Origin: Calcarisporiella thermophila CBS 279.70
Taxonomy: Eukaryota > Fungi > Calcarisporiellomycota
DNA length: 64,000 nt
Assembly (NCBI RefSeq): GCF_041956535.1
Contig: NW_027192201.1
Location: 160,060-224,059 of the forward strand
Reading direction: 5' to 3'
Below the pieces are notes generated by a model that did no database searches, was not told where the DNA came from, and saw only the letters and a program-made list of their open reading frames with translations. The position numbers and the translations under genes were made by a program. Positions 2,249-56,176 of the stretch are shown one piece after another (the stretch's first letter is position 1; each line of letters opens with the position of its first letter).

Positions 2249-5200
2249 ATGTTCTTAGATCACCTGTCGGGACTCCTCCAGCATGATCCCGGTAATTAGA
2301 CGGATTCGGTATATAAATAGAATTGCCACCTAACGTGTCATACATTCAATCAAGATTCCAATATCCTTGCCATTCTCCCACATTCTGTGAGGCGCACGTT
2401 GGTTGCGGAGATAACTGGCTTTCTTTGCCCGAGCTCGGGCCCACCCCCTTCCTCTCTTCTCTCCTCGCCGGCTCACGTGTCATGGTTTTTCGAGATCATT
2501 GCGCAGGGTTTAAATCTTCCTCTTGAGGATATGAACATCACCTCCGATGACGTTACTATCTATTCAACTTGGCTGCTTGATGCTCAAAGCCGACCTCTGG
2601 CTGTACAAAAGCAGGCTGGAACTGAAGGCGAGCAAATTTTTTTACGGGCAAGCCATTCCAATAATAGCTCCTTTCCAAGTGTTAATACTTATCTCTTCTT
2701 TTTTTTTCAAACAAAAGACAATTTTCAGACATTTGTCGCTTCTTTTCCAGCCACGATTTGATTATGCCTCTAGAAACCCCGCCCTACGTGACGGGACTGG
2801 TGCGCTTATCCAAAGGCATATAGAACTCTGCAAGAAGGTATTATCGGTTTTAGCCATGGCCAGCCGTACCATCAGCTCAAATTTTTCAGAGGAAACGTGG
2901 CTTGTCCTGCTAAAAGTGGTTATGGGAACTACCGATTACCTGCTGAAGGCTCCTGTTTCCCTAGATTCGACGAAGCAACCACCAATACCTCTTGGAATGG
3001 GAGATCAGCTGTGTGAACATTTATTAAGGGTGAGTTGACCCAGAAGAGAGTTGGCGGATACGCCGAGATTATAATTTCCCAACCAATTAATTTAATAGGT
3101 CTTGTTTGAACTCTGGCTTCGCTCGAAAGTAACTTGTAACGAACTCTGGGATACCCTCAAGGTAAATATACGCTTAGCCCGAATGCTTCCTCGTCGTCTA
3201 AATTAAAAATATACTTTAGCAATGCTTTAGTAGATGGGTTCATCGCCCCCAAGTTATCCAGCAATGGGTTGCAACATGTCTGGCGTTGACACAACGCGTA
3301 ATCCGGCTTCTCTATGGTAGCCCTGAAGGAACTGAGAGCATCAACATTGTAACGAGTGGTTTGAACGTAGGCCTAGATCTCCCTAATGACTTTATTTTCT
3401 TTGCATGGCACCGTATTATCTATCTCGTGGACGACCCTTGTCAGCTCCCTAATAATTTTAGCCTTGCAATCTTGGGAATAAGCCAGCTTGTCGATGCTTT
3501 TCACGCAATTGGACACAATGGTTCCTCCGGGTCTGTCGGGGGGAGAAAGAACAAGGCAACTGTTCCCGACGGGAACACTATCTTGGACATGTTTGGAGAT
3601 TGGCTTTTTAACGCATGCACAATGCCTTGTAATGAAAACACTCGCGAGGGTATTGCTGAGGCATATGGCTGCCTATGTCGGATATTTTCACGGCCACAGC
3701 ATCGACAACCATTCCACCGAGAATACCTGGAGCGTTTTTATAGCATTTTGATCCCAGGCCTCCGCCTTGACGTCGCTCTCCCCACCATCTTAACAAATAC
3801 CTCGGATTTATTTGCCACAGAACTTGCAGGAGTAAGGATGTTAGTGCCGGACTTTGTCGTCGGCCTGAAACACGTCCTGCCCCGGCTAGCCCCTAAATTC
3901 CAATGCTCTCCAAGAATAAACCTGGATGATCTGCATCTGGCTGCGTTACGAGTGTGTTCAACTCTTATTTCGCTTCCAAACCATTTTAGCCAAGTAAATT
4001 TGAGAGAAGAGTGGAACCAAGGGCTAACATCGACGAGCAACGAGGACGCTGAAGAGATCGCCATTACTCAGGTACCATACCACTTTCACATATACATTAT
4101 TTTAGCCATCATTAACCCCCTTTTCTCCCTGTTTGTAGATTAGAGTGCTATACTCAGAAGTCAGCAACACCTCCAGATCCTTTTCACAAGTAAGTTAACA
4201 AACCTTCTAATATTCATTCTCCACGCTAATGACCCCACACATCCTGTACTCTAGTTAAAATACCATTTAATTGAAATGCTATTGACGTCGCTAAAGACTG
4301 AAACCTCTGCCTCCAATTTGCAGTTTCTGCTGAAACTGATTAATGTTTATGTGATCGAGGATATTGATTTCTGTCCCGGTTTGGTGGGTCCTGTGGTGAA
4401 ATTAGTACAAGAAAAGGTAAGATAAATAAAAAATAAAAAGAGCCTATGTATTCAAGATAGCTGACTAGAATCCAATCTAATAGATTTTGATGATGCATTG
4501 GCCAAACAATGTCACTCTTACTGCCTTTGATATGTTAATAGCTTTTGTATGTTTATATGACCATGTAAAGGAGGAAAGCAAGGTAAAAAAATTTATACAC
4601 TTTACTATTGGTGAAAATTTCCAATATCCATCCACTTGACTTTTTCCTTTTCAATTATAAAGAATTGCCCTCGTGAATTAGTTTTATCGCTTTGTCGCTA
4701 TGTCGACAATTTAATGTCTGCCGGAAACTTTGTAAGGAATATGACTATATAGCTTAAACTGCGATCTATTCGGCCCGACTTAATATCATCGTTTTCATAC
4801 TTGATAGGGCCAGACTTACAAACTCATTATTCGCGCATATGAGTGTGTAATTCGATGGATACTTATTGGCCAATGGATTGTCGACGATAATGATTGTCTT
4901 CAGACGGTGGTCTCAAGCTTATGCCGCGGAATTACTTTGTATGAACGTGAAGTAGCAAGTGCACAGAGCGAAGCTTCCTCTGACCGAGGCAAAAAGCCGC
5001 GAAATCAGCCTGCCTTCCTACCCGCCAATAAGCTATTCATTCGTGCTCAACGGAATCCTCCCCCCGAATCATCCTCAAAGCCAGCCGCCTCCGCCTCTAC
5101 TCGATACAAAAAAGAACTCCTTGCGATTAAATCCGCAGCCGAGATATGCCTTGCACGGTTTGCGAATCAACTAGGAAAATCCCCACTATTGCACGAGAAA

Positions 5201-17107: not shown

Positions 17108-18004
17108 TTACAGGCGTTGGGCAACTACAACCGAATTCACGACATTGGTGTGAGGATGCACGACAAGCAGAGTTCGAAAATGGGTTTCTAGATCTTCCGG
17201 TTCTACGACCGGGTAGAGAAGAGTTCTCAGCCCGTGCGCGCTCCTAAGCAATACATAGGTTCCAGAACGTGTACACTGCGACAAATGCTCCACAAATCGC
17301 CGCTTTTCTTCTCGCGTCTTCCCGACTAGTGCCGCCAAAATCACCAAATCGGCGTCGCGTAAATCCTCGTAATCCAATGCATCTGCATTGTGGAAGTTCA
17401 TTTCCTGGACCCCTATGCTCTGCGCAACCCCAGCTCCCAGTTTGCAGGCCTCCGAATCCAGATCCACGTTATCGACACGGATATCTGGAAAATGTTTCTG
17501 CAGCAGGATGGACGTGAGTGGCAGTGGCCCTGAGCCAATGAACACGGCCCGCCTCCAGCGTGTGACTCTGTCCCCTGCTACGGCTTCAAGGGCATGGACC
17601 TCCATGCGCGTTAAATCGACGTAGTTACCATAGTACGGAAACTCCTCCACCCCACTCCCATCGCATATCCTCCGTGCCCAGTGCCGTTCCAGGCGGAACT
17701 CACCTTCCGAACAGAGAGGCTGCAGTTTTTTGGTCAGGACATGAAAGAGCGGCTCCTTGATGAGCTGACGCGTGAGAGGGTACGGGCGGATACAAAATGT
17801 GACCAGCTGAGTAAACAGCGCGTTGACAACCTCGCAGGGCTCAAGCGATGACTGTCGCGCTAGTTCACTATGCACATGTTCAATCTCATGGAGAAGAGCG
17901 GCAACCTGTTTCTGCTGCTCATCATGGGCTGTGGGCGCATCTTTTTGGAGGGGTGGGAAGGAGAAGATGGAGGTGGGAACATCGAGGATGGTGGGGTGAG
18001 TCAT
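17108..18004 (-). CDS. NAS: Nicotianamine synthase (intronless)
   Basis: 298 aa. NAS motifs VNALFTQLV, LCSEGEFRLERHWA, FPYYGNYVDL (YxxN/Y), FIGSGPLPLTS (SAM binding), ILAALVG..EK, RSAHGLRTLLYPVV, VHP...VVNSVVVA. Confidence 0.93.
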   Translation of the reverse strand: MTHPTILDVPTSIFSFPPLQKDAPTAHDEQQKQVAALLHEIEHVHSELARQSSLEPCEVVNALFTQLVTFCIRPYPLTRQLIKEPLFHVLTKKLQPLCSEGEFRLERHWARRICDGSGVEEFPYYGNYVDLTRMEVHALEAVAGDRVTRWRRAVFIGSGPLPLTSILLQKHFPDIRVDNVDLDSEACKLGAGVAQSIGVQEMNFHNADALDYEDLRDADLVILAALVGKTREEKRRFVEHLSQCTRSGTYVLLRSAHGLRTLLYPVVEPEDLETHFRTLLVVHPHTNVVNSVVVAQRL

Positions 18005-46666: not shown

Positions 46667-47173
46667 TCTTGACGCGTGTATTTTAGGAAAATTGAACCAA
46701 GTCTGTTGTTTCTTTTATTGGATATTGGAAATTAGTTGACCAAAAGGAGATTCTCGCGTAAAAAAAAAGGCCCACATTGCAATAAAATAACTGTCCTGCG
46801 AGCTTGGTCCCATGTATCTTATAAGTGTGCCTTAAAATATGTCTTTGTGAGCACAACTAGCCTAAAGGTGGGCTAAGCCTTCTTGCCTTTATAGCAAGCA
46901 CTCAACAAACTCAGAACGGTCTATGTTTTTACAAATGCTATCGCTTTTTGTGCTTTCTCTCCGTTTCGCTCCATCCAGCCAGAGTTTCGCAACAACCCAT
47001 GTAAGCGTCGTTGACACCAGCGATTTTTTTTTTACTGGCACTAAATAGCATATTTCCCCTACATCGTTCCTGTTAGCAAACCTCCCACTCAATGCCCGTT
47101 TTTACAGGAGCGGGGGTGATAATGATATACAAAACCCACTTCTTTAAGGCTAATTTTGATGTCCCTGCCCAGC

Positions 47174-47637
47174 NNNNNNNNNNNNNNNNNNNNNNNNNNN
47201 NNNNNNNNNNNNNNNNNNNNNNNNNNNNNNNNNNNNNNNNNNNNNNNNNNNNNNNNNNNNNNNNNNNNNNNNNNNNNNNNNNNNNNNNNNNNNNNNNNNN
47301 NNNNNNNNNNNNNNNNNNNNNNNNNNNNNNNNNNNNNNNNNNNNNNNNNNNNNNNNNNNNNNNNNNNNNNNNNNNNNNNNNNNNNNNNNNNNNNNNNNNN
47401 NNNNNNNNNNNNNNNNNNNNNNNNNNNNNNNNNNNNNNNNNNNNNNNNNNNNNNNNNNNNNNNNNNNNNNNNNNNNNNNNNNNNNNNNNNNNNNNNNNNN
47501 NNNNNNNNNNNNNNNNNNNNNNNNNNNNNNNNNNNNNNNNNNNNNNNNNNNNNNNNNNNNNNNNNNNNNNNNNNNNNNNNNNNNNNNNNNNNNNNNNNNN
47601 NNNNNNNNNNNNNNNNNNNNNNNNNNNNNNNNNNNNN
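47174..47637. other. Assembly gap (N run, 464 nt)
   Basis: Run of n characters. Confidence 1.
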
Positions 47638-47901
47638 GTGTGCCTTGATGGCCTCCCATGTTCATATAAATCCATTTTGTTAGAAGGAGATAATAGGATA
47701 AAAGGTGAAGCCATTGCAAAAACTGATATAAATTAGATGATGTTATGGAATCACATTCAGGTAAAATAGAAAATAATAAATATAGATAAAGAGGTAAATC
47801 AAAGAAAAGGATATAAAATGATATAGTGGGGGGGGGGGTGATTGAATCTATCAATTGATGAGGGAAGCTAAACAAGAATGAGGTGAGGCGCTGAACTCTC
47901 T

Positions 47902-50682
47902 CTAGCCGCTGCCATCTTCTCCGGGTCGCTCGTTGTTGTAGTATTCACGTTCCTCGTTCCGGCGAGTTCTTGCGCGAGTCAGATTCGGAGGGGATGGGGT
48001 GGTAGAGGAAGAGAGTGGGGGATAAGAAGGAGGGCCGGACAGGTTCGAGTCGGAGAGCATAAACGCCGGCTGTGGGGGCATCGAGTATGCGATGCCAAGC
48101 TCTTGCATCATCCCCTTGACGGCCAGTGCAAACTAGTGTGAAAAGCAATGGTTAGAGGGGTTATCGTTTGCGCCTGGTATGCGCTCGCAAGAGTGAAAAT
48201 GATGGGTGAACACATACTTTGGTTCGGTTCGCAAATCGTCTCCCCATGTCCTGCCAATTCCAGCGGTGCTGGATGCACATGCTCAAGTACAATTTGTTCA
48301 TGTTGTCTATCTGGGTCACCTGGATATCGAACCCGGGCGAGAAGTCGCGCGCACCCTCATTTTCAAGCCAATCTCGAATGCGGTCGCGCAGCTCTACAAT
48401 CAACTCGTGCGGCGTGGTGAAATTCACTTGCGCCGTCACGGTCTCGCTCATGTTGCCAGAGCGTCGCACATTCTTAATGTCTTTGGTGCACAAGACCTTG
48501 TTAGGCATATAGACAACCGTACCATCCCACCGGCTAGAGGGTGGTCAGGGGCGTGTTTAGCTATTGAAGTAACCACTTTCTCAACTAGAGGATATGATGC
48601 TTACATAAAGGTGGTTGTGAGCAGGCCCATGCTATGCACAATATAGTGCACATCGCCAATGTAGCAGCGGTCTCCGACGTCGTAAGGATGCTAGAAAAGT
48701 GCGCAACCCACATGTATTAGACTCAAAAGAGAAGGTGGTGAGACACTCCCAGTATCCCCGAGCTTACCGTCACAAAGAGGAAAATGATGCTTTGGAAAAG
48801 ATCGCGTGCACTCCCTCCAAATACAAAACTAAGAGCAACGATGGCCGACGAGAACGGAAGCAGACTCGAGAGGATGTCTTTGTCGAAAATGGCTATGAAG
48901 ATCAGTAGCACGAAGATAAACGCAATGATCATGAATATTGTGTCCAATTTGCCAACCGCGTTTCCCAAATCGCGCATAGAAGCCACCAGATCCCGATGCT
49001 CTTGGTAGATAAACAGCACGTTGTCTTTCTGCGTTGTGCGAAAATAAAAAATAGGAAAATTAAGGCCTACATAGACCAGTCGGCACCCTTTTAAAACCCA
49101 GGTTTACCATTTCCGACTTCGAAACATCGCCATTGCCGTCCTTGTCAAAGATCGCAAAGGCCTTTTCCGCCTCGCTCCGCTCGAAATCAAAATACGGGAG
49201 AAAATCCTCCACCGACAGATGGTTTCTATTTGCTTGAAGACCTTCAAAGAGCTTCCGGGCAAGCTTGCTTGCTTTCCCTGCCGAATGCATGTCATTGTGG
49301 CCATTGACGGGATCCTGCATCGCAATGTTGGCGAGCTTCTTGTTGAGCGTGTTCAGCAGCAGCGGGGTTTGTTTGGCGGTATTAGGCGGACTAGCGCGGC
49401 TTTGGGATTGGCTTTGTACGGTGCTCGTGCTTGTGCGTGGCTGGAGATTGGAGAGAGGGATCTCATCGTTCTGGTATGATATTCCTGTGTCGGAAGTGTT
49501 ATTGCGACTATGGTATGGTCGTCGGTAGCGGACTTTCTCTTCTTGCTTGGGAGCCTTCTTTTTCGCCTTCATGAGTTTGTCGAGCACTTTTCGATGCAAA
49601 CCAAATGAGTTGAGGTATGGGTTAAGTTCGGTGTATACTAAAACATACCCGACATAGCATATTTGTTTTCCTGGATACGCTCCTTGTATGCAGAGCGGTG
49701 GAACTTGACGGCTGAGTAGAAGAGAGCGGGTTTGGGGGGGGGGGGGAGGAGGGGGAAGGGTGAGTGGGCATATCCCAATTCGAAATGCATGCAATGGGCA
49801 CCTACCGATCATTTGAACAAGGAACTTCTCGAACAGAAGGATGACTGCCGTTCCAAACAACGCCCGGAACGTGTCGTGGACAATCCTGTAGCTAATGGAG
49901 AGCTCGGGGATCTGAACCACAACATTAGCGTCCGGCTGCTTCACTTCTCTGATGGTATAGGTGGCGGCCGAATAGAGGAATCCCATGAAAAACTCGAAAG
50001 CTCCCCAAAGCCAGGCGGCGATGAAAAGAGTGACCACATAGGGCCTGACACCAATGAAATACTATGATAGAGTTAGCAATGGCTCCACGCAGTCAAAAGA
50101 TCGATTCTCTGTTGAGCATACCTCGAGCCGCGTTTTGATCGACTCGGAGCACCCGCCCGTGAGAAGTTTGGTTAGCGTCACGACAAGTTTCGGGAGAACC
50201 TCAACGCAAAAGTAGGCAATGGCTCCCATAATCCACACCCATGCGGCCCAGAACGACCACATTTGTACCTGCTGGAGGGTGGTATTTCCTCTTCGAGTGG
50301 GATTGTATATCTGCTCGGGAAAGACGTTATACACAAACAATAAGATCACGGCCGGCGCCACGAGCGCTGCACCACCCAGCGCTCCCACGATGAGCGCGCG
50401 GACAAACGGTGAAAGTCTGGCCCAGAAGTGGGTGGCAGCCTGGCGTCGCTTTTTCCGAAAATCCGGATCGTCAAGTTCGGACTCTGCCTCAGCCTCCCAG
50501 TCGAAATCATCCTCGTCATCAAGGGGGTCCTGCTCACCAGGAAGCACGGGATTAGTTTCATTAAAAAAGGGCGTGGTTCGGCTCTCCGTCAATGGGGAAT
50601 CCTTGTTAATTTCCGCACTCTCTCGGAGAGGGGGAAGATATTGTTGTGAAAATGGAGCGGAAGGCGGCGGCAATTGGCTCAT
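47902..50682 (-). CDS. MscS-like mechanosensitive channel with EF-hand (Msy1/Msy2 type; multi-exon)
   Basis: Several TM helices; EK..VQ.IAVKFH..AY.ERI; EF-hand FDKDGNGDVSKSE; AVGKLD; SFVFGGSA..LFQSIIFLFVTHPYDVGDR; PN.VL..K.I.NVRRS; NWQD...R..NR. Confidence 0.9.
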
Positions 50683-51881
50683 GGTGTAATCTATTCCTAG
50701 ACAGCGGGGAGAATGGGTTAGAGAGGGCGCATTTTCATGAAATCCAGGAAATCAAAATAAAGAGAAGGGCTTTTTTCTCACAGGGGGAGGAGGCATGCAG
50801 GGTTCGCTGCGACGCGTAGAATACAGTACCTTTTGCGAAGATCCCAGGATGTCAGCGGGGGGCCATGCAGCCGGGAGTCCAAGAATGCAGGGGAAAGGAA
50901 TGAAAGGGGCAGCAAGATGGAGGCTCTTGGTGAACGGCACCCGCTTCTTAAAGACGAGAACCTTATTTACCTCCGTTACACCCACTTGTATTTTGATTTT
51001 CGCTTCAGCTCTTCCCTCCAAATCGGTGCTTGGCTGCACACCCGCCCCATCAAGCCGACACGATTGGAGCTGCCCGGGAGCCCTGAAGCCTCCCTGCGGC
51101 CAAGATTGCCCAGCCCGGCCCGCCTTCTCTCTCCTCAGCCCAGCCATAATAATTAATGGGCCGCCCGCGCTCTGATGAGCGAGGCAGCTGCTCTTCCTCA
51201 GGGACTGCATGCCTCCTCTGCAGTGGTTTAAACCGTCGACATTCTAGAAGATAAGCGCGTTTCATTTTGGAAAACAAAGCCCTGGAAACTCAGTGTGTTG
51301 CCGTGGACAGTCCAGGCCATCGAGTGGACCATAGGGGTGCATGGAGAAGCCCTGCGCTGCGCCAGCGCTGGTGTCGCATTCTCGAAGCGGTGGTCGAATC
51401 CCAAGCGAAGTGCTCGTTATCTGTGGAGGTGCGATCTATTTACATATTTGTTGATAAGTCTTCAAATAGCAAATGGTTGGTGGCTGCCATACTAAACTCA
51501 TCCAAGCATAGTCTTTGGCTACTCCCGTAGATTCCTTGTATCACTGAAAACCTGCCCTTATTCACGCTTTTTAAATTACGCACCTCTTTGGGCGAAAGGG
51601 CTCGGAAAGACCGACCTTCAGAATAAGAAATGGTCAAGTTTGCAAAATACACAGATCATACAATAAGCTAGTCCTTCATCTGAAATGGATGCAGCCAGGC
51701 CCGACAACACGTTTTGACGGAGTGTCGTCAGCCGATCCTTCCAGCTGGATTTCAGGTACATTTGGCCACAAGCGAAATTAGTATTACAGATCCTGCCGCC
51801 TGGCCCAATCAAAATCCGATTGATGAGCTTGAGGGCCAGAGGCTGGAAGTGGTAGATGCCCATCTGAAGCATTGCTGCAAA

Positions 51882-52804
51882 ATGGCATCTAGAATCAAAC
51901 TAAAAAAGTCATCCACTATTCACATCACATCCTCCACCTCGCTTCCACCAAAGAGCACTGGCGATCTAACTTGCTATCTTCGCCTCTTCATTGGCGAGCT
52001 TCGGCTCTCATCGACTTCATTGGCTCTCTTGCCCAATCCCCTAAAGGTTCGCGTCGTATGGCCTGAAACCGACGAGGGAGGGCTCCTCTATTCGCCCAGC
52101 TCTATTCGGGCCAAATCGAGTGTTTATACTGGCCATGGACCCGTCTACCCTTCCTCTAGGCGATACCCTGTGCGGGAGGATAATCATGCATTACGCGCCT
52201 ATCTCAAGCGAGTCCGCCTGAATATGGATCTCCTATCTGGCCGTAAGCCGGTGGGGCGAATCGTGGTCGAAGATATCGAAGATGTATTAGGCGGGGAGGT
52301 GAATAGATGGTGGTTTGTGATAGGGATCGCTAATGGGCGTGTGACAGGGGAGGTCATTGGCGAGATAAGCATCGGTATGCAAATAGAGCCGGTAACTCCG
52401 AAGAAAGGACTCGACTTGCTGCTGGAGGAGGTGAAACTAGACCAAGGCTGGGAAGAACTTAGCGATGCGGAAGAGAGGGAAGACCGGGAGGCAAGGTGGT
52501 CGCCGAAGCACGAGGATAATAAGTCAAAAGCAAGATGCGCCGAGAAGCGACCCCTATCTAGAAAACCGAAATCGGAGGGCACGCCAACTAGAAAGTTGGA
52601 GAGAGAGACCAGTGGCTCTATGTCAGAAGTGTTACGAATCTATGCAAACGCAAGAAGGCTTCATGATGGTAGATGATATGAGCTCTGTTTATTTTTGCAA
52701 CTTGACGAAATATCCTAATCACATGAAACTCTCGTTTCTTTATAGCCATGACCAGCAGCCTACATAGGCATATAGACGAATTTACTTCCAATGACTCCAC
52801 ATAA
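51882..52804 (+). CDS. Short protein homologous to the N-terminal C2 domain region of centriolar C2CD3
   Basis: ATG 51882. The ORF runs to 52676, or is spliced (intron 52669-52745, CCTAATC branch point) to stop at 52804. Segments STSLPP..G.L.CYLRL, VRVVWPE..EGG.LY.P, RYPVR.....AYL, PVGRIVV and IGEISIGMQIEP align in order with the recalled human C2CD3 N-terminus. Confidence 0.7.
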
Positions 52805-53309
52805 TCTTGAATGATAGCTACAAAGGATTTATGTTTGTATATGTTGTACTATATAATAGTAATAGTGGTCTTTGCATGGATCTTGTGGAATCATCCATTT
52901 GAATCGGAAAAAAAAAACTATTCCCACACTGGCTTGTAAAAAAAAAAAAAAAACTGAGTGGTAATTCTTCTACGAATACATCACGGCAATAAATCCTATC
53001 TTCCATTGACTGAAAATGGGTCAGCACTGACCCCTAGCATCGCCCCGTTGCTCTACTCGTGCTCAGCAGAAAAGTCTCAATAAGTAAGCTTAGAGTTTAG
53101 GCGAAGGTAATGCGACGACTCGCTCTGGGGTTGAGGGTGAGTGTCGCAAGGCCATTCAAACTGGATGAGCCCAATTGAATACGAAGTCAAGATGGGCCCA
53201 CAGAAATAACAGCACACGTGGTCGCAAATATACTTGCTCTAATGGTTCCCACCCTTTCTCCGTCCATGAGCCACGATCCTCGATATCCACAAGAATCTCT
53301 AGAGGCACT

Positions 53310-56176
53310 TTATTGCTGGCACTGAGGCTCGTCTGTCTGCTCTCCTCCAATTTCGGCCTCAAGGGTCGTAGAGACAAATTGGGAATGAGGGCTTGCGGAG
53401 AAACTCGGTAGTGAGCTAGCTCTCGAGAAGAGGGAGGGGGTGAGCAGGGACTCTGAAAGTGCTTCCAAATAGCCACCCTGCAACAGCTGATCATCAAATA
53501 TCAGATTTTCGTGATCGACAGCGCCGCCCTCAACCGCCTGGGCTGCCGCAGCGGAGGTATACATCGGCGATGTGGGGGGGGGCTGGTTGAATATCGTGCA
53601 TTTGCTCAGGAGCCGTGCTGCTTGGCATGGATTCAATCGTCGTCGTGGTAGTGAATAGATTGGCCAGGGTATTTTCCATGGGATTTCCATGCTCCTCGTG
53701 AAGTGTATCAATGGCCCCGCCGAATTCCCTGCTCTTCATCGGCACTGTGGAGGGGGTTGGACCAGGATTCGATGCTGTCGTAGCTACCGAGTTGCTCTTC
53801 CTCAGACCAGAGCAATACACGGGACAAGGACTCCGCTCGTCGGACATCGGGAAGAGCGTCATTCTGGCCACACTGCTGGATCCATTTTCAACTTGCTGGC
53901 TGGGTGCTTCACTCGTTGCCCACCGCTCCTCGCTCTTTCCGTGCGAAACCTCGAGTGTGCGATGGAGCCCATACGAATCTCTAAGCAATGCAAGGGCATT
54001 GCCCGCCATCCCCCAGAACGTCTGCATGCGCTCCAACAAGACGACGCCCCGCTCCACGGATTCGCGACATTTGGCCGCCAGGGCTCGGTCGGGGGCATTC
54101 AGGTACCGCAGGTGGATAGAGCATGCAATGTACACACAGCCGGGGGCGTAGTAAGCAATTCCATACAGTTGCTTCATCTCCAAGTTCCAGAGGAGGTCGA
54201 CCAGGATATTGGCAGAGCAAATGCAGTATTTGGCCGACGTCTCCGAAAGCGAATCCAGCACCTGCTTTTCCTCCGGCTTGGCAAACAAATAGTTGCGATG
54301 CAGCATAATAATGGCCGTATTGTAGATGATATGCATCAGTAAAAAACATCGATTGCTTTGCGCCAGCTCCGCCTTGAGATTCTGCTCCTTCAGCCGGAGG
54401 TGGTCCGGGAGAGAAAGCTTCCAGGACAAGATCGATGCATTCAGCTTCATCAATTCGTTGAGATAGGTGGATGTGGTGATGGGGATGTCCCGGCTGTTGA
54501 ATCGCACCACCCGGCCCAGCAGCGCGACAATCCGGACCAAATATCCTAGGCGACTTAGAGTGACCGTGCCCCATCGCTTCGAGCGCGTCACATCATCCTC
54601 TCTCGCCGTCGTCGCCCACTCTTCGCCCTCATTGAGCCGCTCCGTGACCACCATTCGCTCCAACTCATAGTCCTCGTCCTCGGTCGGAAGAAACACCTCG
54701 CAGTCCAGTTCGTGGATCGTTTGGGTCCGACCAATGGCGGCGGAGCACAGCCGATCGATCAGAAAGCACACCCAAAAACACCGCCGACGCGTCTCTTGTT
54801 CAGACCAATCCAGCTTGCGGGGGATGAAGCCGCTCTCCGTAGGCACCATGACCAGCCCATCAGGTATTTCGTGGTGCATGCCGAGTTCTTGAGCCATTCT
54901 ATCCACGAAGGACAAATGGACGTCAACGGCAGAGTCAACCTTTTCCAGAGAGAAGTGCAAAATTTACCTTGTTGCCATGCCTAGCAACATCCCCGCTCGA
55001 CTGCCTCTCGCACAGCCAATCTCGTGCACTCCTAATATTAACATTGCCTGTACCGTGGCGACCGAGGGTTGATCCCAGGATTGCGAGATTAGATCCAGCG
55101 CACGATTGGTAAATAGCTCACCTGCTAGGCATGGGGGGTCGTGTTGTAACTCGCGACGTTTCGAAAATCTAGGCATAAAGATGGGTTAGAGGATCGAACT
55201 ACAAGGGCGAGAAAATTCAACCACAGCTCATCGCTATGTACCGAGAAGACACGGCCAGAACACTATAGAGCAACATAGGCGGGACTTGGTTGTTCTGCAG
55301 CTGCTTCATGAACGTGGGTTTGTGGATCACGGGCAAGGTGGTCCACATGTGCTGGAAAAAACCCATCACCAAATCGGCGAGTAGGTCGGCCGGTAGCTGT
55401 CCCTTGTTCGACGGCGAGCGAGGGATACTCTCTGGCAAGGAGAGGTTAACAGAGAGGTGGGATGGCGACTGGTCAGCCTCCTTTTTGGAGAGTATTTCAA
55501 AGAGCAGCGGCTTCGCGGAAAACAGGTCAAGTAGCGACTTCGACAGCCGATCCGCATCGGGGATATCGGAAGCGGAGTCGAAGTAGAGTCTCAGCCCTCC
55601 CTCTACCCTTCTTCTCCAGCTCTCCTGCTCACTTTGGTGTTTTTCCATAGGCATAGAGGATTTCATCTTTTGTGCGTCGATGCCTAAGCGCACGTCCTCA
55701 GAACCCAGCTCACGGGGATTACTATCGACCGAGAACGGCATGCAATGCTGAGAGTTCGTATCCGCAAGCTCGATGGTGACCGGGCTGCAGCATGGAGACT
55801 GAGAGTGCGATTTGGTTGCCTCGCGCATCGCGCCTGCCTCCCATTGCTGTTTCAGCAGTTTTTGCTGAAAATCAACTTGCGGATTCTCGCCCGACGGTTG
55901 GCCCTCTTGAAACGACTGCAGTAGCTTTTCCATTCGCACCAGGCGCTTCTCAAGCTGATCAACATAGTCTTTATTCGGGCCGCGCTTCTTCTTGGATGGG
56001 TTATAGACACATTTCATATTGGCATTCACACAATTGCCGCATTGAGGTCTCGCACCATCACATTTTGTTTTCTTCTTGCGACATGCCTCACAGGCCAAGG
56101 AAAGCCGTTTGCGTTTCGGGGCGCTGACTTTTGCCTCTTCCCCACGTGTGCTCTTTGCGGAGATGGCCCTTTCCAT
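53310..56176 (-). CDS. Zn(II)2Cys6 fungal transcription factor with Fungal_trans domain (C-terminus uncertain: stop at 53530 as assembled, or 53310 if a homopolymer frameshift is corrected)
   Basis: ACEACRKKKTKCDGARPQCGNC....MKCVY cluster, coiled coil, FFQH....PVIHKPTF, QAMLIL, A.RMAQELGMH, ETRRRCFWVCFLIDR. Two introns near 55240-55170 and 54966-54899. Confidence 0.9.

What the first reader, a model, noticed from the sequence alone, without database searches (positions are those of the whole stretch)
51882..52804. Miniature C2CD3: a centriole distal-end protein relic in a fungus
Seen: a ~265-285-aa protein whose blocks (ITSSTSLPPKSTGDLTCYLRL / LKVRVVWPETDEGGLLYSP / RRYPVR...LRAYL / PVGRIVV / VIGEISIGMQIEP) align in order with my recollection of the human C2CD3 N-terminus ([21 protein letters not shown] / VLVRVRWWGETSDGTLFCP / TRYAIR...FTSYL / PIGRVQI / KLGELQVSLALEP). 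Splicing 52669-52745 yields ARRLHDAMTSS, echoing C2CD3 GNKLRNAMVIS. The gene then ends, with a convergent gene just downstream. Known: C2CD3 is a >2000-aa multi-C2 protein needed for centriole elongation and ciliogenesis, typical of ciliated lineages; some non-flagellated zygomycete-grade fungi have centriole-like spindle pole bodies. Inference: a reduced centriolar module retained for a vestigial centriole/SPB, or repurposed. This would mark an intermediate in the centriole-to-SPB transition.
Basis: partly seen in the sequence, partly recalled or inferred. Interest (0 to 1): 0.85.

Follow-up and report, generated by a model that had tools for sequence, protein, structure and literature searches.

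The report
Miniature centriole protein in non-flagellated fungus
A soil mould with no sign of flagella carries a tiny version of the centriole protein C2CD3 along with most core centriole-building genes, so it may still build a stripped-down centriole, a structure land fungi are thought to have lost.

Summary
The homology is confirmed. The ORF at 51882-52676 (+) matches the whole Pfam C2_C2CD3_N model (53 bits, cut-off 27), and it is the only copy in the genome. The gene is VTP21DRAFT_1204 of Calcarisporiella thermophila (Mucoromycota). Every gene model gives 264-346 aa, against 2353 aa in human, and no further C2 domain follows. The proposed 3' intron is plausible but has no RNA support. The genome also encodes PLK4, SAS-6, SAS-4/CPAP, centrin-2, CFAP20, a CEP120-like and a weak STIL-like protein. 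It has one dynein heavy chain (cytoplasmic-1) and only alpha, beta and gamma tubulins. IFT54/57, B9, RPGRIP1L, RSP3 and PACRG were not found, though these searches lack a positive control. Best reading (about 0.6): a working minimal part of a cilium-free centriole-like MTOC, built like worm SAS-1 (basic tail plus first C2 domain binding microtubules), rather than a lone relic. A 2026 atlas of 184 fungi lists C2CD3, CPAP, CEP135 and STIL as specific to flagellated fungi, but SAS-6, CEP120 and PLK4 as not specific. Other readers in this scan had already noted the partner genes elsewhere in this genome. Localisation, ultrastructure, selection and fungal ortholog lengths are untested.

The parts
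51882..51932 (+). Probable start codon and short basic N-terminal tail (aa 1-17; 4 K/R, no D/E)
   Evidence: ATG has A at -3 and G at +4; lies 17 codons before the Pfam domain
51933..52394 (+). C2CD3 N-terminal C2 domain (aa 18-171), full-length match to PF25339
   Evidence: E 3.4e-14, 53.3 bits, model 1-144/145; only copy in the genome, no stop inside
52395..52613 (+). Charged, low-hydrophobicity linker (aa 172-244; 18 K/R, 18 D/E), probably disordered
   Evidence: no Pfam match; disorder is inferred
52614..52668 (+). Predicted amphipathic helix near the C-terminus (aa 245-262); candidate partner-binding helix
   Evidence: among the highest hydrophobic moments of the C-terminal part, 0.54, about equal to an acidic stretch at aa 186; role inferred
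52669..52745 (+). Putative 77-nt intron (GTAGAT donor, CTAAT branch at 52715, pyrimidine tract, TAG). If retained, the ORF stops at 52674-52676 (264 aa)
   Evidence: absent from the public model; no RNA support
52746..52804 (+). Putative last exon extending the helix; stop TAA at 52802-52804 (281 aa in all)
51630..51881 (+). Upstream extension of the public gene model: ATG at 51630, inferred intron 51638-51694 with an atypical GTTTGC donor, 65 extra residues with no domain
   Evidence: P0001 compared with the DNA; domain at 83-236 of P0001
52805..53309 (.). About 0.5 kb A/T-rich 3' region with long A runs and AATAAA at 52988, shared with the convergent gene
53310..56176 (-). Convergent Zn2Cys6 / Fungal_trans transcription factor that bounds the gene at its 3' side (neighbour, not part of the module)
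   Evidence: 3' end at 53310 taken from ORF list and note s1-594700
49060..50682 (-). 5' part of the divergent upstream neighbour, an EF-hand membrane protein that looks like an MscS channel (neighbour only)
   Evidence: EF-hand; MscS call is from own knowledge

Best explanation
The gene encodes a minimal C2CD3/SAS-1-type protein that works in a reduced, cilium-free centriole (or centriole-like cylinder) at this fungus's microtubule-organising centre. Shown: a complete C2CD3 first C2 domain with a basic N-tail, a charged linker and a short terminal helix; loss of all later C2 domains; and co-retention of PLK4, SAS-6, SAS-4/CPAP, centrin-2 and CEP120-like and STIL-like genes with no detected IFT, transition-zone, axonemal or delta/epsilon-tubulin genes. 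Inferred: PLK4, STIL and SAS-6 template a small cartwheel; SAS-4 and CEP120 add microtubules, probably singlets because delta/epsilon tubulin are missing; the mini-C2CD3 clamps the microtubule wall through its tail and C2 domain, as SAS-1 residues 2-184 do, and stabilises the cylinder or sets its length; its end helix binds a luminal partner. The long middle and C-terminal part of C2CD3 became dispensable once distal appendages and the cilium were lost.
For: Full-model Pfam hit, single copy, no stop inside. GC and GC3 lie within the range of neighbouring genes. PLK4 has kinase, PB1 and PB2 domains. SAS-6_N scores 73 bits. The SAS-4 G-box matches CPAP structures at E 2.5e-18. DUF3668 is over its cut-off. 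STIL_N is below cut-off, E 3e-4. The centrin is closer to centrin-2 (E 4e-41) than to Cdc31 (2e-28). The single dynein heavy chain is cytoplasmic-1. Nine tubulin loci are 3 alpha, 5 beta, 1 gamma. No IFT57, IFT54, B9, C2-C2_1, RSP3, PACRG, FOP, FAM161, RTTN, CEP76 or MNR match. In SAS-1, residues 2-31 and C2-1 (32-184) are each needed for microtubule localisation (10.64898/2026.02.27.708307), the end helix recruits SSNA-1, and worm centrioles have singlets (PMC12599939). The human C2CD3 N-terminus lies at the A-microtubule hook (PMC12707624). A nine-microtubule cylinder is described in the SPB of Coemansia (PMC6070874).
Against: No ultrastructure, localisation or expression data for this species. 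No homolog by single-sequence search, so the protein is highly diverged and selection could not be measured. Expected partners were not found: SSNA1 (weak pattern search only), OFD1, MNR, Sfi1. Overexpressed human C2CD3 alone did not bind microtubules in one study. The absence searches have no eukaryotic positive control. SAS-6, CEP120 and PLK4 also occur in other non-flagellated fungi, where no centriole is reported in the papers read, so retention alone does not prove a centriole.
Confidence: 0.58

Rival explanations
1. Repurposed: the C2 domain and the other centriole genes now act on an acentriolar SPB or on cytoplasmic microtubules, with no nine-fold cylinder. The mini-C2CD3 is a general microtubule stabiliser or adaptor.
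For: SAS-1 bundles ordinary microtubules in HeLa cells. SAS-6, CEP120, PLK4 and centrin-1/2 persist in other non-flagellated fungi. Animal SAS-6 can dock on the yeast SPB through pericentrin (PMC6559791). Distal partners were not found.
Against: It needs parallel repurposing of PLK4, SAS-6, SAS-4, STIL and CEP120, whose main known joint task is centriole assembly (own knowledge). The PLK4 cryptic polo box and the SAS-4 G-box, which serve centriole-specific contacts, are retained.
Confidence: 0.2
2. Decaying relic: a truncated remnant that is no longer under selection, left from slow piecemeal loss of the centriole toolkit.
For: About 85-90% of the human length is missing. No single-sequence homolog was found. 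The CEP120-like and STIL-like genes are also short and weakly matching. No RNA run was listed.
Against: The ORF is open over the whole domain, and the cut falls after the domain and a helix. Flagellum loss is dated to about 660-680 Ma (PMC7865070), far too long for an unselected ORF to stay open and recognisable (inference).
Confidence: 0.07
3. Not a special reduction: short C2CD3 proteins are normal in many fungi, or widespread in Mucoromycota and Zoopagomycota but missed by earlier surveys. This gene would then be an ordinary member.
For: In the 2026 atlas only 4 of 19 C2CD3-group proteins carry a canonical C2 hit. PF25339 is a new model, and phmmer cannot link this protein to any other, so similar proteins would have been missed.
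Against: The atlas calls C2CD3 flagellated-specific in 184 proteomes. The ESM Atlas C2CD3_N cluster shown is 1681 aa, and no C2CD3_N cluster appeared once clusters with canonical C2 were skipped (only clusters of 50 or more members are searched).
Confidence: 0.1
4. Split or mis-modelled gene: the ORF is the 5' part of a longer C2CD3, or the rest is encoded elsewhere.
For: No transcript data. The gene models disagree at both ends.
Against: A convergent gene begins about 0.5 kb downstream. No plus-strand frame of 120 or more codons up to 64000 has any Pfam match. The nearest canonical C2 on this contig is about 127 kb away. All nearby acceptors end the frame within 45 residues.
Confidence: 0.03
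5. Cryptic flagellated stage, or contamination by a zoosporic fungus.
For: The gene set is otherwise typical of chytrids. Another reader noted a TCTEX1D2-like light chain (s1-606288, unchecked).
Against: One dynein heavy chain, cytoplasmic-1. No IFT, radial spoke or transition-zone matches. The centriole genes lie on seven different contigs (C6, C7, C8, C9, C11, C19, C32), four of which (C6, C8, C9, C19) also hold tubulin or housekeeping genes.
Confidence: 0.02

Closest known systems
Vertebrate C2CD3 (2353 aa; PMC12707624)
   Same: Same N-terminal C2 domain family (PF25339, whole model), preceded by a short basic tail. The genome shares centrin-2, CEP120-like and SAS-4 context.
   Different: About one eighth of the length; no further C2 domains; no OFD1, MNR or FOP partner found; no cilium or appendage genes found.
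C. elegans SAS-1 (570 aa; PMC12599939, 10.64898/2026.02.27.708307)
   Same: A shortened C2CD3 homolog: unstructured N-tail, C2-1, disordered linker, C-terminal helix. It works in singlet-microtubule centrioles.
   Different: SAS-1 has a second C2 domain, binds SSNA-1 (not found here) and also acts at cilia. The reduction here is independent (inference) and goes further. No direct sequence comparison could be run.
Chytrid and blastoclad C2CD3 orthologs (PMC13358043)
   Same: Fungal C2CD3 family, found with CPAP, SAS-6, STIL and CEP135.
   Different: Those species have zoospores with IFT and axonemal dyneins. The orthogroup is listed as flagellated-fungi-specific. Their lengths were not obtained.
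Centriole-like SPB cylinder of Coemansia reversa (PMC6070874)
   Same: Non-flagellated zygomycete with a nine-microtubule cylinder, proposed as an intermediate from centriole to SPB.
   Different: There the structure is seen but SAS-6, CPAP and CEP135 were not detected. Here the genes are present and the structure is unexamined. Different phylum.

Membership tests
C2CD3 / SAS-1 family | N-terminal C2CD3-type C2 domain above the curated cut-off | tested here: met
   PF25339 53.3 bits vs 27, model 1-144/145, sole family hit
C2CD3 / SAS-1 family | Domain sits at the N-terminus behind a short basic tail | tested here: inconclusive
   True if the start is 51882; the public model adds 65 aa; no transcript data
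C2CD3 / SAS-1 family | C2 beta-sandwich fold by structure | tested here: inconclusive
   Single-sequence AlphaFold failed, pLDDT 31-33, so no fold search was run; Atlas feature neighbours are C2-type families, including C2CD3_N at 0.91
Canonical full-length C2CD3 | Several further C2 domains, length above 1500-2000 aa | tested here: not met
   264-346 aa under any model; no C2 downstream
C2CD3 / SAS-1 family | One-to-one orthology by phylogeny with chytrid and animal C2CD3 | not testable with these tools
   No homolog retrieved; single copy in the genome
C2CD3 / SAS-1 family | SSNA1-binding helix and an SSNA1 gene in the genome | tested here: inconclusive
C2CD3 / SAS-1 family | Localises to the centriole wall or lumen and binds microtubules | not testable with these tools
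   Needs experiment
Centriole assembly module | PLK4 with kinase and cryptic polo box | tested here: met
Centriole assembly module | SAS-6 | tested here: met
   (head domain plus coiled-coil exons)
Centriole assembly module | SAS-4/CPAP with G-box | tested here: met
Centriole assembly module | STIL/Ana2/SAS-5 | tested here: inconclusive
   STIL_N 20.1 bits, below cut-off 27, E 3e-4
Centriole assembly module | CEP135/Bld10 | not tested
   Only an unchecked note from another reader (s1-618964)
Triplet-microtubule centriole | Delta and epsilon tubulin | tested here: not met
   Nine tubulin loci: alpha, beta, gamma only
Flagellated (zoosporic) fungus | Axonemal dyneins, dynein-2, IFT, radial spokes, transition zone | tested here: not met
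   the family searches lack a eukaryotic positive control, while the dynein count is self-controlled

The most novel reading that the evidence does not exclude
Calcarisporiella thermophila, a culturable terrestrial Mucoromycota fungus, still assembles a true PLK4/SAS-6-templated, cilium-free, probably singlet centriole at its spindle pole, braced by a one-domain C2CD3. Centriole loss would then be uncoupled from flagellum loss in fungi, and this gene set would outline a minimal centriole.
Probability: 0.45. Interest if true: 0.9.

Novelty: new variant of a known kind. Interest (0 to 1): 0.74.

Why it matters
The papers read state that centrioles were lost with the flagellum at the base of terrestrial fungi (PMC1599754) and that centriole-assembly proteins occur only in chytrids among fungi (PMC6070874, PMC6559791, PMC12659703). 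The one zygomycete with a centriole-like SPB cylinder lacked detectable genes. This genome shows the opposite: a near-complete duplication kit and a distal-end protein, with no cilium genes found, in a species that grows in culture. It makes the centriole-to-SPB transition directly testable by EM and tagging. It is also a natural deletion experiment on C2CD3, a human ciliopathy gene, pointing to the tail, first C2 domain and one helix as the cilium-independent core.

Tried and rejected
Single-sequence searches found only the protein itself: 1.84 billion representatives, 5.8 billion clusters, metagenome contigs, PDB, NCBIfam. Two AlphaFold runs without an alignment gave unusable models, so no fold search was made. 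No sequencing run was listed, so read laying was not used and neither splice nor start could be checked. Searches meant to map PLK4 and CEP120 across fungi found only self and one unnamed metagenome fragment, or nothing. The SSNA1 pattern was at chance level, and its best hit lies in an unrelated, thiamine-biosynthesis-like gene. The weak second CFAP20-domain hit is not WDR90. Other C2 families that the Atlas ranked by features (MAP10_N, DUF1005, CTSRT, NT-C2) were rejected because Pfam gives only PF25339.

Full report
Observation. The plus-strand ORF from the ATG at 51882 to the TGA at 52674-52676 encodes 264 aa. Pfam gives one family only: PF25339 C2_C2CD3_N, residues 18-171, model positions 1-144 of 145, E 3.4e-14, 53.3 bits against a curated cut-off of 27. 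The same model finds this one locus in the 28.2-Mb genome, with no stop inside. The recalled resemblance is therefore real at family level. Structure could not be tested: AlphaFold without an alignment failed twice. ESM Atlas feature neighbours are C2-type families, among them a 1681-aa C2CD3_N cluster.

Gene model. The protein is in the public collection as VTP21DRAFT_1204 of Calcarisporiella thermophila, 329 aa. That model starts at 51630, uses an inferred intron 51638-51694 with an atypical GTTTGC donor, and ends at the unspliced stop. Its GTA donor and 77-nt length fit the five annotated PLK4 introns mapped. The genome paper says that some of its genomes were annotated with transcriptomes where available (PMC11393059); whether this model has RNA support is unknown, and no run was listed. 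Neither end is settled, but every combination gives 264-346 aa. The gene cannot plausibly continue: a convergent Zn2Cys6 gene starts about 0.5 kb downstream, long plus-strand frames up to 64000 have no domain, and the nearest canonical C2 on the contig is about 127 kb away.

Anatomy. A basic 17-aa tail, the C2 domain, a 73-aa charged linker and an amphipathic helix at about 245-262, which the putative last exon would extend. No tool returned a C2CD3 sequence, and single-sequence searches found no relative at all.

Organism and gene inventory. Calcarisporiella is a saprobic lineage sister to Mucoromycotina, described with sporangiophores and no zoospores mentioned (PMC6899921). Found in its genome: PLK4 with kinase, PB1 and PB2; SAS-6; SAS-4/CPAP, whose G-box matches solved CPAP structures at E 2.5e-18; a CEP120-like protein over cut-off; a STIL-like ORF below cut-off; a centrin-2-type centrin beside CFAP20. 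Other readers noted CEP135, CEP162-like, TBC1D31 and CCDC77, which I did not check. Not found: IFT57, IFT54, B9, RPGRIP1L-type C2, RSP3, PACRG, FOP, FAM161, RTTN, CEP76, MNR, Sfi1 and a convincing OFD1. These blanks have no eukaryotic positive control, and intron-split or diverged genes could be missed. Sfi1, common in fungi from my own knowledge, was also blank, which shows the limit. Two counts are self-controlled and stronger. There is one dynein heavy chain, and it is cytoplasmic dynein-1 (581 bits vs 232 for dynein-2). The nine tubulin loci are three alpha, five beta and one gamma. A motile flagellum is thus very unlikely, and triplet microtubules are unlikely. The genes lie on seven contigs, several with tubulin or housekeeping genes, which argues against contamination.

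How it most likely works. Human C2CD3 (2353 aa) spans from the luminal ring (C-terminus) to a hook on the A-microtubule (N-terminus), recruits the appendage platform, and its loss shortens centrioles (PMC12707624). C. elegans SAS-1 (570 aa) keeps singlet-microtubule centrioles intact. Its first 31 residues and first C2 domain are each needed for microtubule localisation (10.64898/2026.02.27.708307), and its last helix recruits SSNA-1 (PMC12599939). The fungal protein has kept the wall-side part and one helix. I infer that it braces a small cilium-free centriole built by PLK4, STIL, SAS-6 and SAS-4 at the spindle pole, and that the rest of C2CD3 was shed with appendages and cilium (about 0.58). 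Rivals: repurposing on an acentriolar SPB or other microtubules (0.2), short forms being common in fungi (0.1; this lowers novelty, not the mechanism), a decaying remnant (0.07), a split gene (0.03), hidden flagella or contamination (0.02). All functional steps are inferred; none was shown.

Comparison with what is known. Reviews and surveys state that centriole-assembly proteins are confined to chytrids among fungi, and that none was detected in Coemansia reversa despite its nine-microtubule SPB cylinder (PMC6070874, PMC6559791, PMC12659703). The 2026 atlas of 184 fungal proteomes classes C2CD3, CPAP, CEP135 and STIL as flagellated-fungi-specific, allowing one residual case. It classes SAS-6, CEP120, PLK4 and centrin-1/2 as not specific (PMC13358043). 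Calcarisporiella does not appear in its text or the stored part of its supplement. Scattered retention of SAS-6 and CEP120 in non-flagellated fungi is therefore already on record, and the PLK4 group there may include other kinases. I found no paper reporting C2CD3, or the set with CPAP and PLK4, in a non-flagellated fungus (subscription journals are not covered). The protein is a member of the C2CD3 family by its defining domain. It is not a canonical full-length C2CD3, and by architecture it resembles SAS-1.

Verdict. The more important point is the context: a near-complete centriole kit with no cilium genes found, in a culturable terrestrial fungus. This is a new variant of a known kind, with interest 0.74. 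It would merit about 0.9 if EM shows a centriole. It would fall to about 0.4 if short C2CD3 proteins prove common in zygomycetes and no structure is found.

Noticed in passing
G000:C4:1332000-1341999 (L030 3053-3403, 4417-4776, 7425-7775, 9510-9866): Cluster of four paralogous 116-119 aa proteins with signal-peptide-like starts and many cysteines, beside a 202-aa secreted-looking ORF (L030 1052-1660) that resembles bacterial peptidoglycan peptidases of the M15 type (resemblance from memory).
   Followed up: no
G000 C1, C2, C5, C6, C8, C16, C19 (L003-L011): Expanded tubulin set: three alpha and five beta loci, the beta genes falling into two visibly different sequence types.
   Followed up: partly
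G000:C9:296300-297800 (L031 about 3400-4800): Centrin-2-type gene tail to tail with CFAP20, next to a mitochondrial RNA polymerase-like gene; CFAP20 is kept although its junction partner PACRG was not found.
   Followed up: partly
G000:C8:296260-297750 (L017 694-2181, minus): CEP120-like ORF of 495 aa with a diverged DUF3668 domain and no homolog by single-sequence search; it may be reduced in the same way as the C2CD3 gene.
   Followed up: partly
G000:C7:895280-895965 (L019 1105-1788, minus): Short STIL_N-like ORF (227 aa), below the Pfam cut-off, beside a ribosomal protein S6-like gene.
   Followed up: partly
window 17108-18004 (+): 298-aa ORF that looks like a nicotianamine synthase (recognised from memory, not searched).
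   Followed up: no
window about 47170-47650: A stretch of about 480 bases reads N, inside or beside the MscS-like and ICE2-like genes.
   Followed up: no
window 53310-53530 (-): The Zn2Cys6 gene's last ORF stops at 53530 while another frame runs on to 53310 across a homopolymer run, a possible assembly frameshift (also note s1-594700).
   Followed up: no
window 52906-52954: Two long A runs in the 3' region shared by the convergent genes.
   Followed up: no
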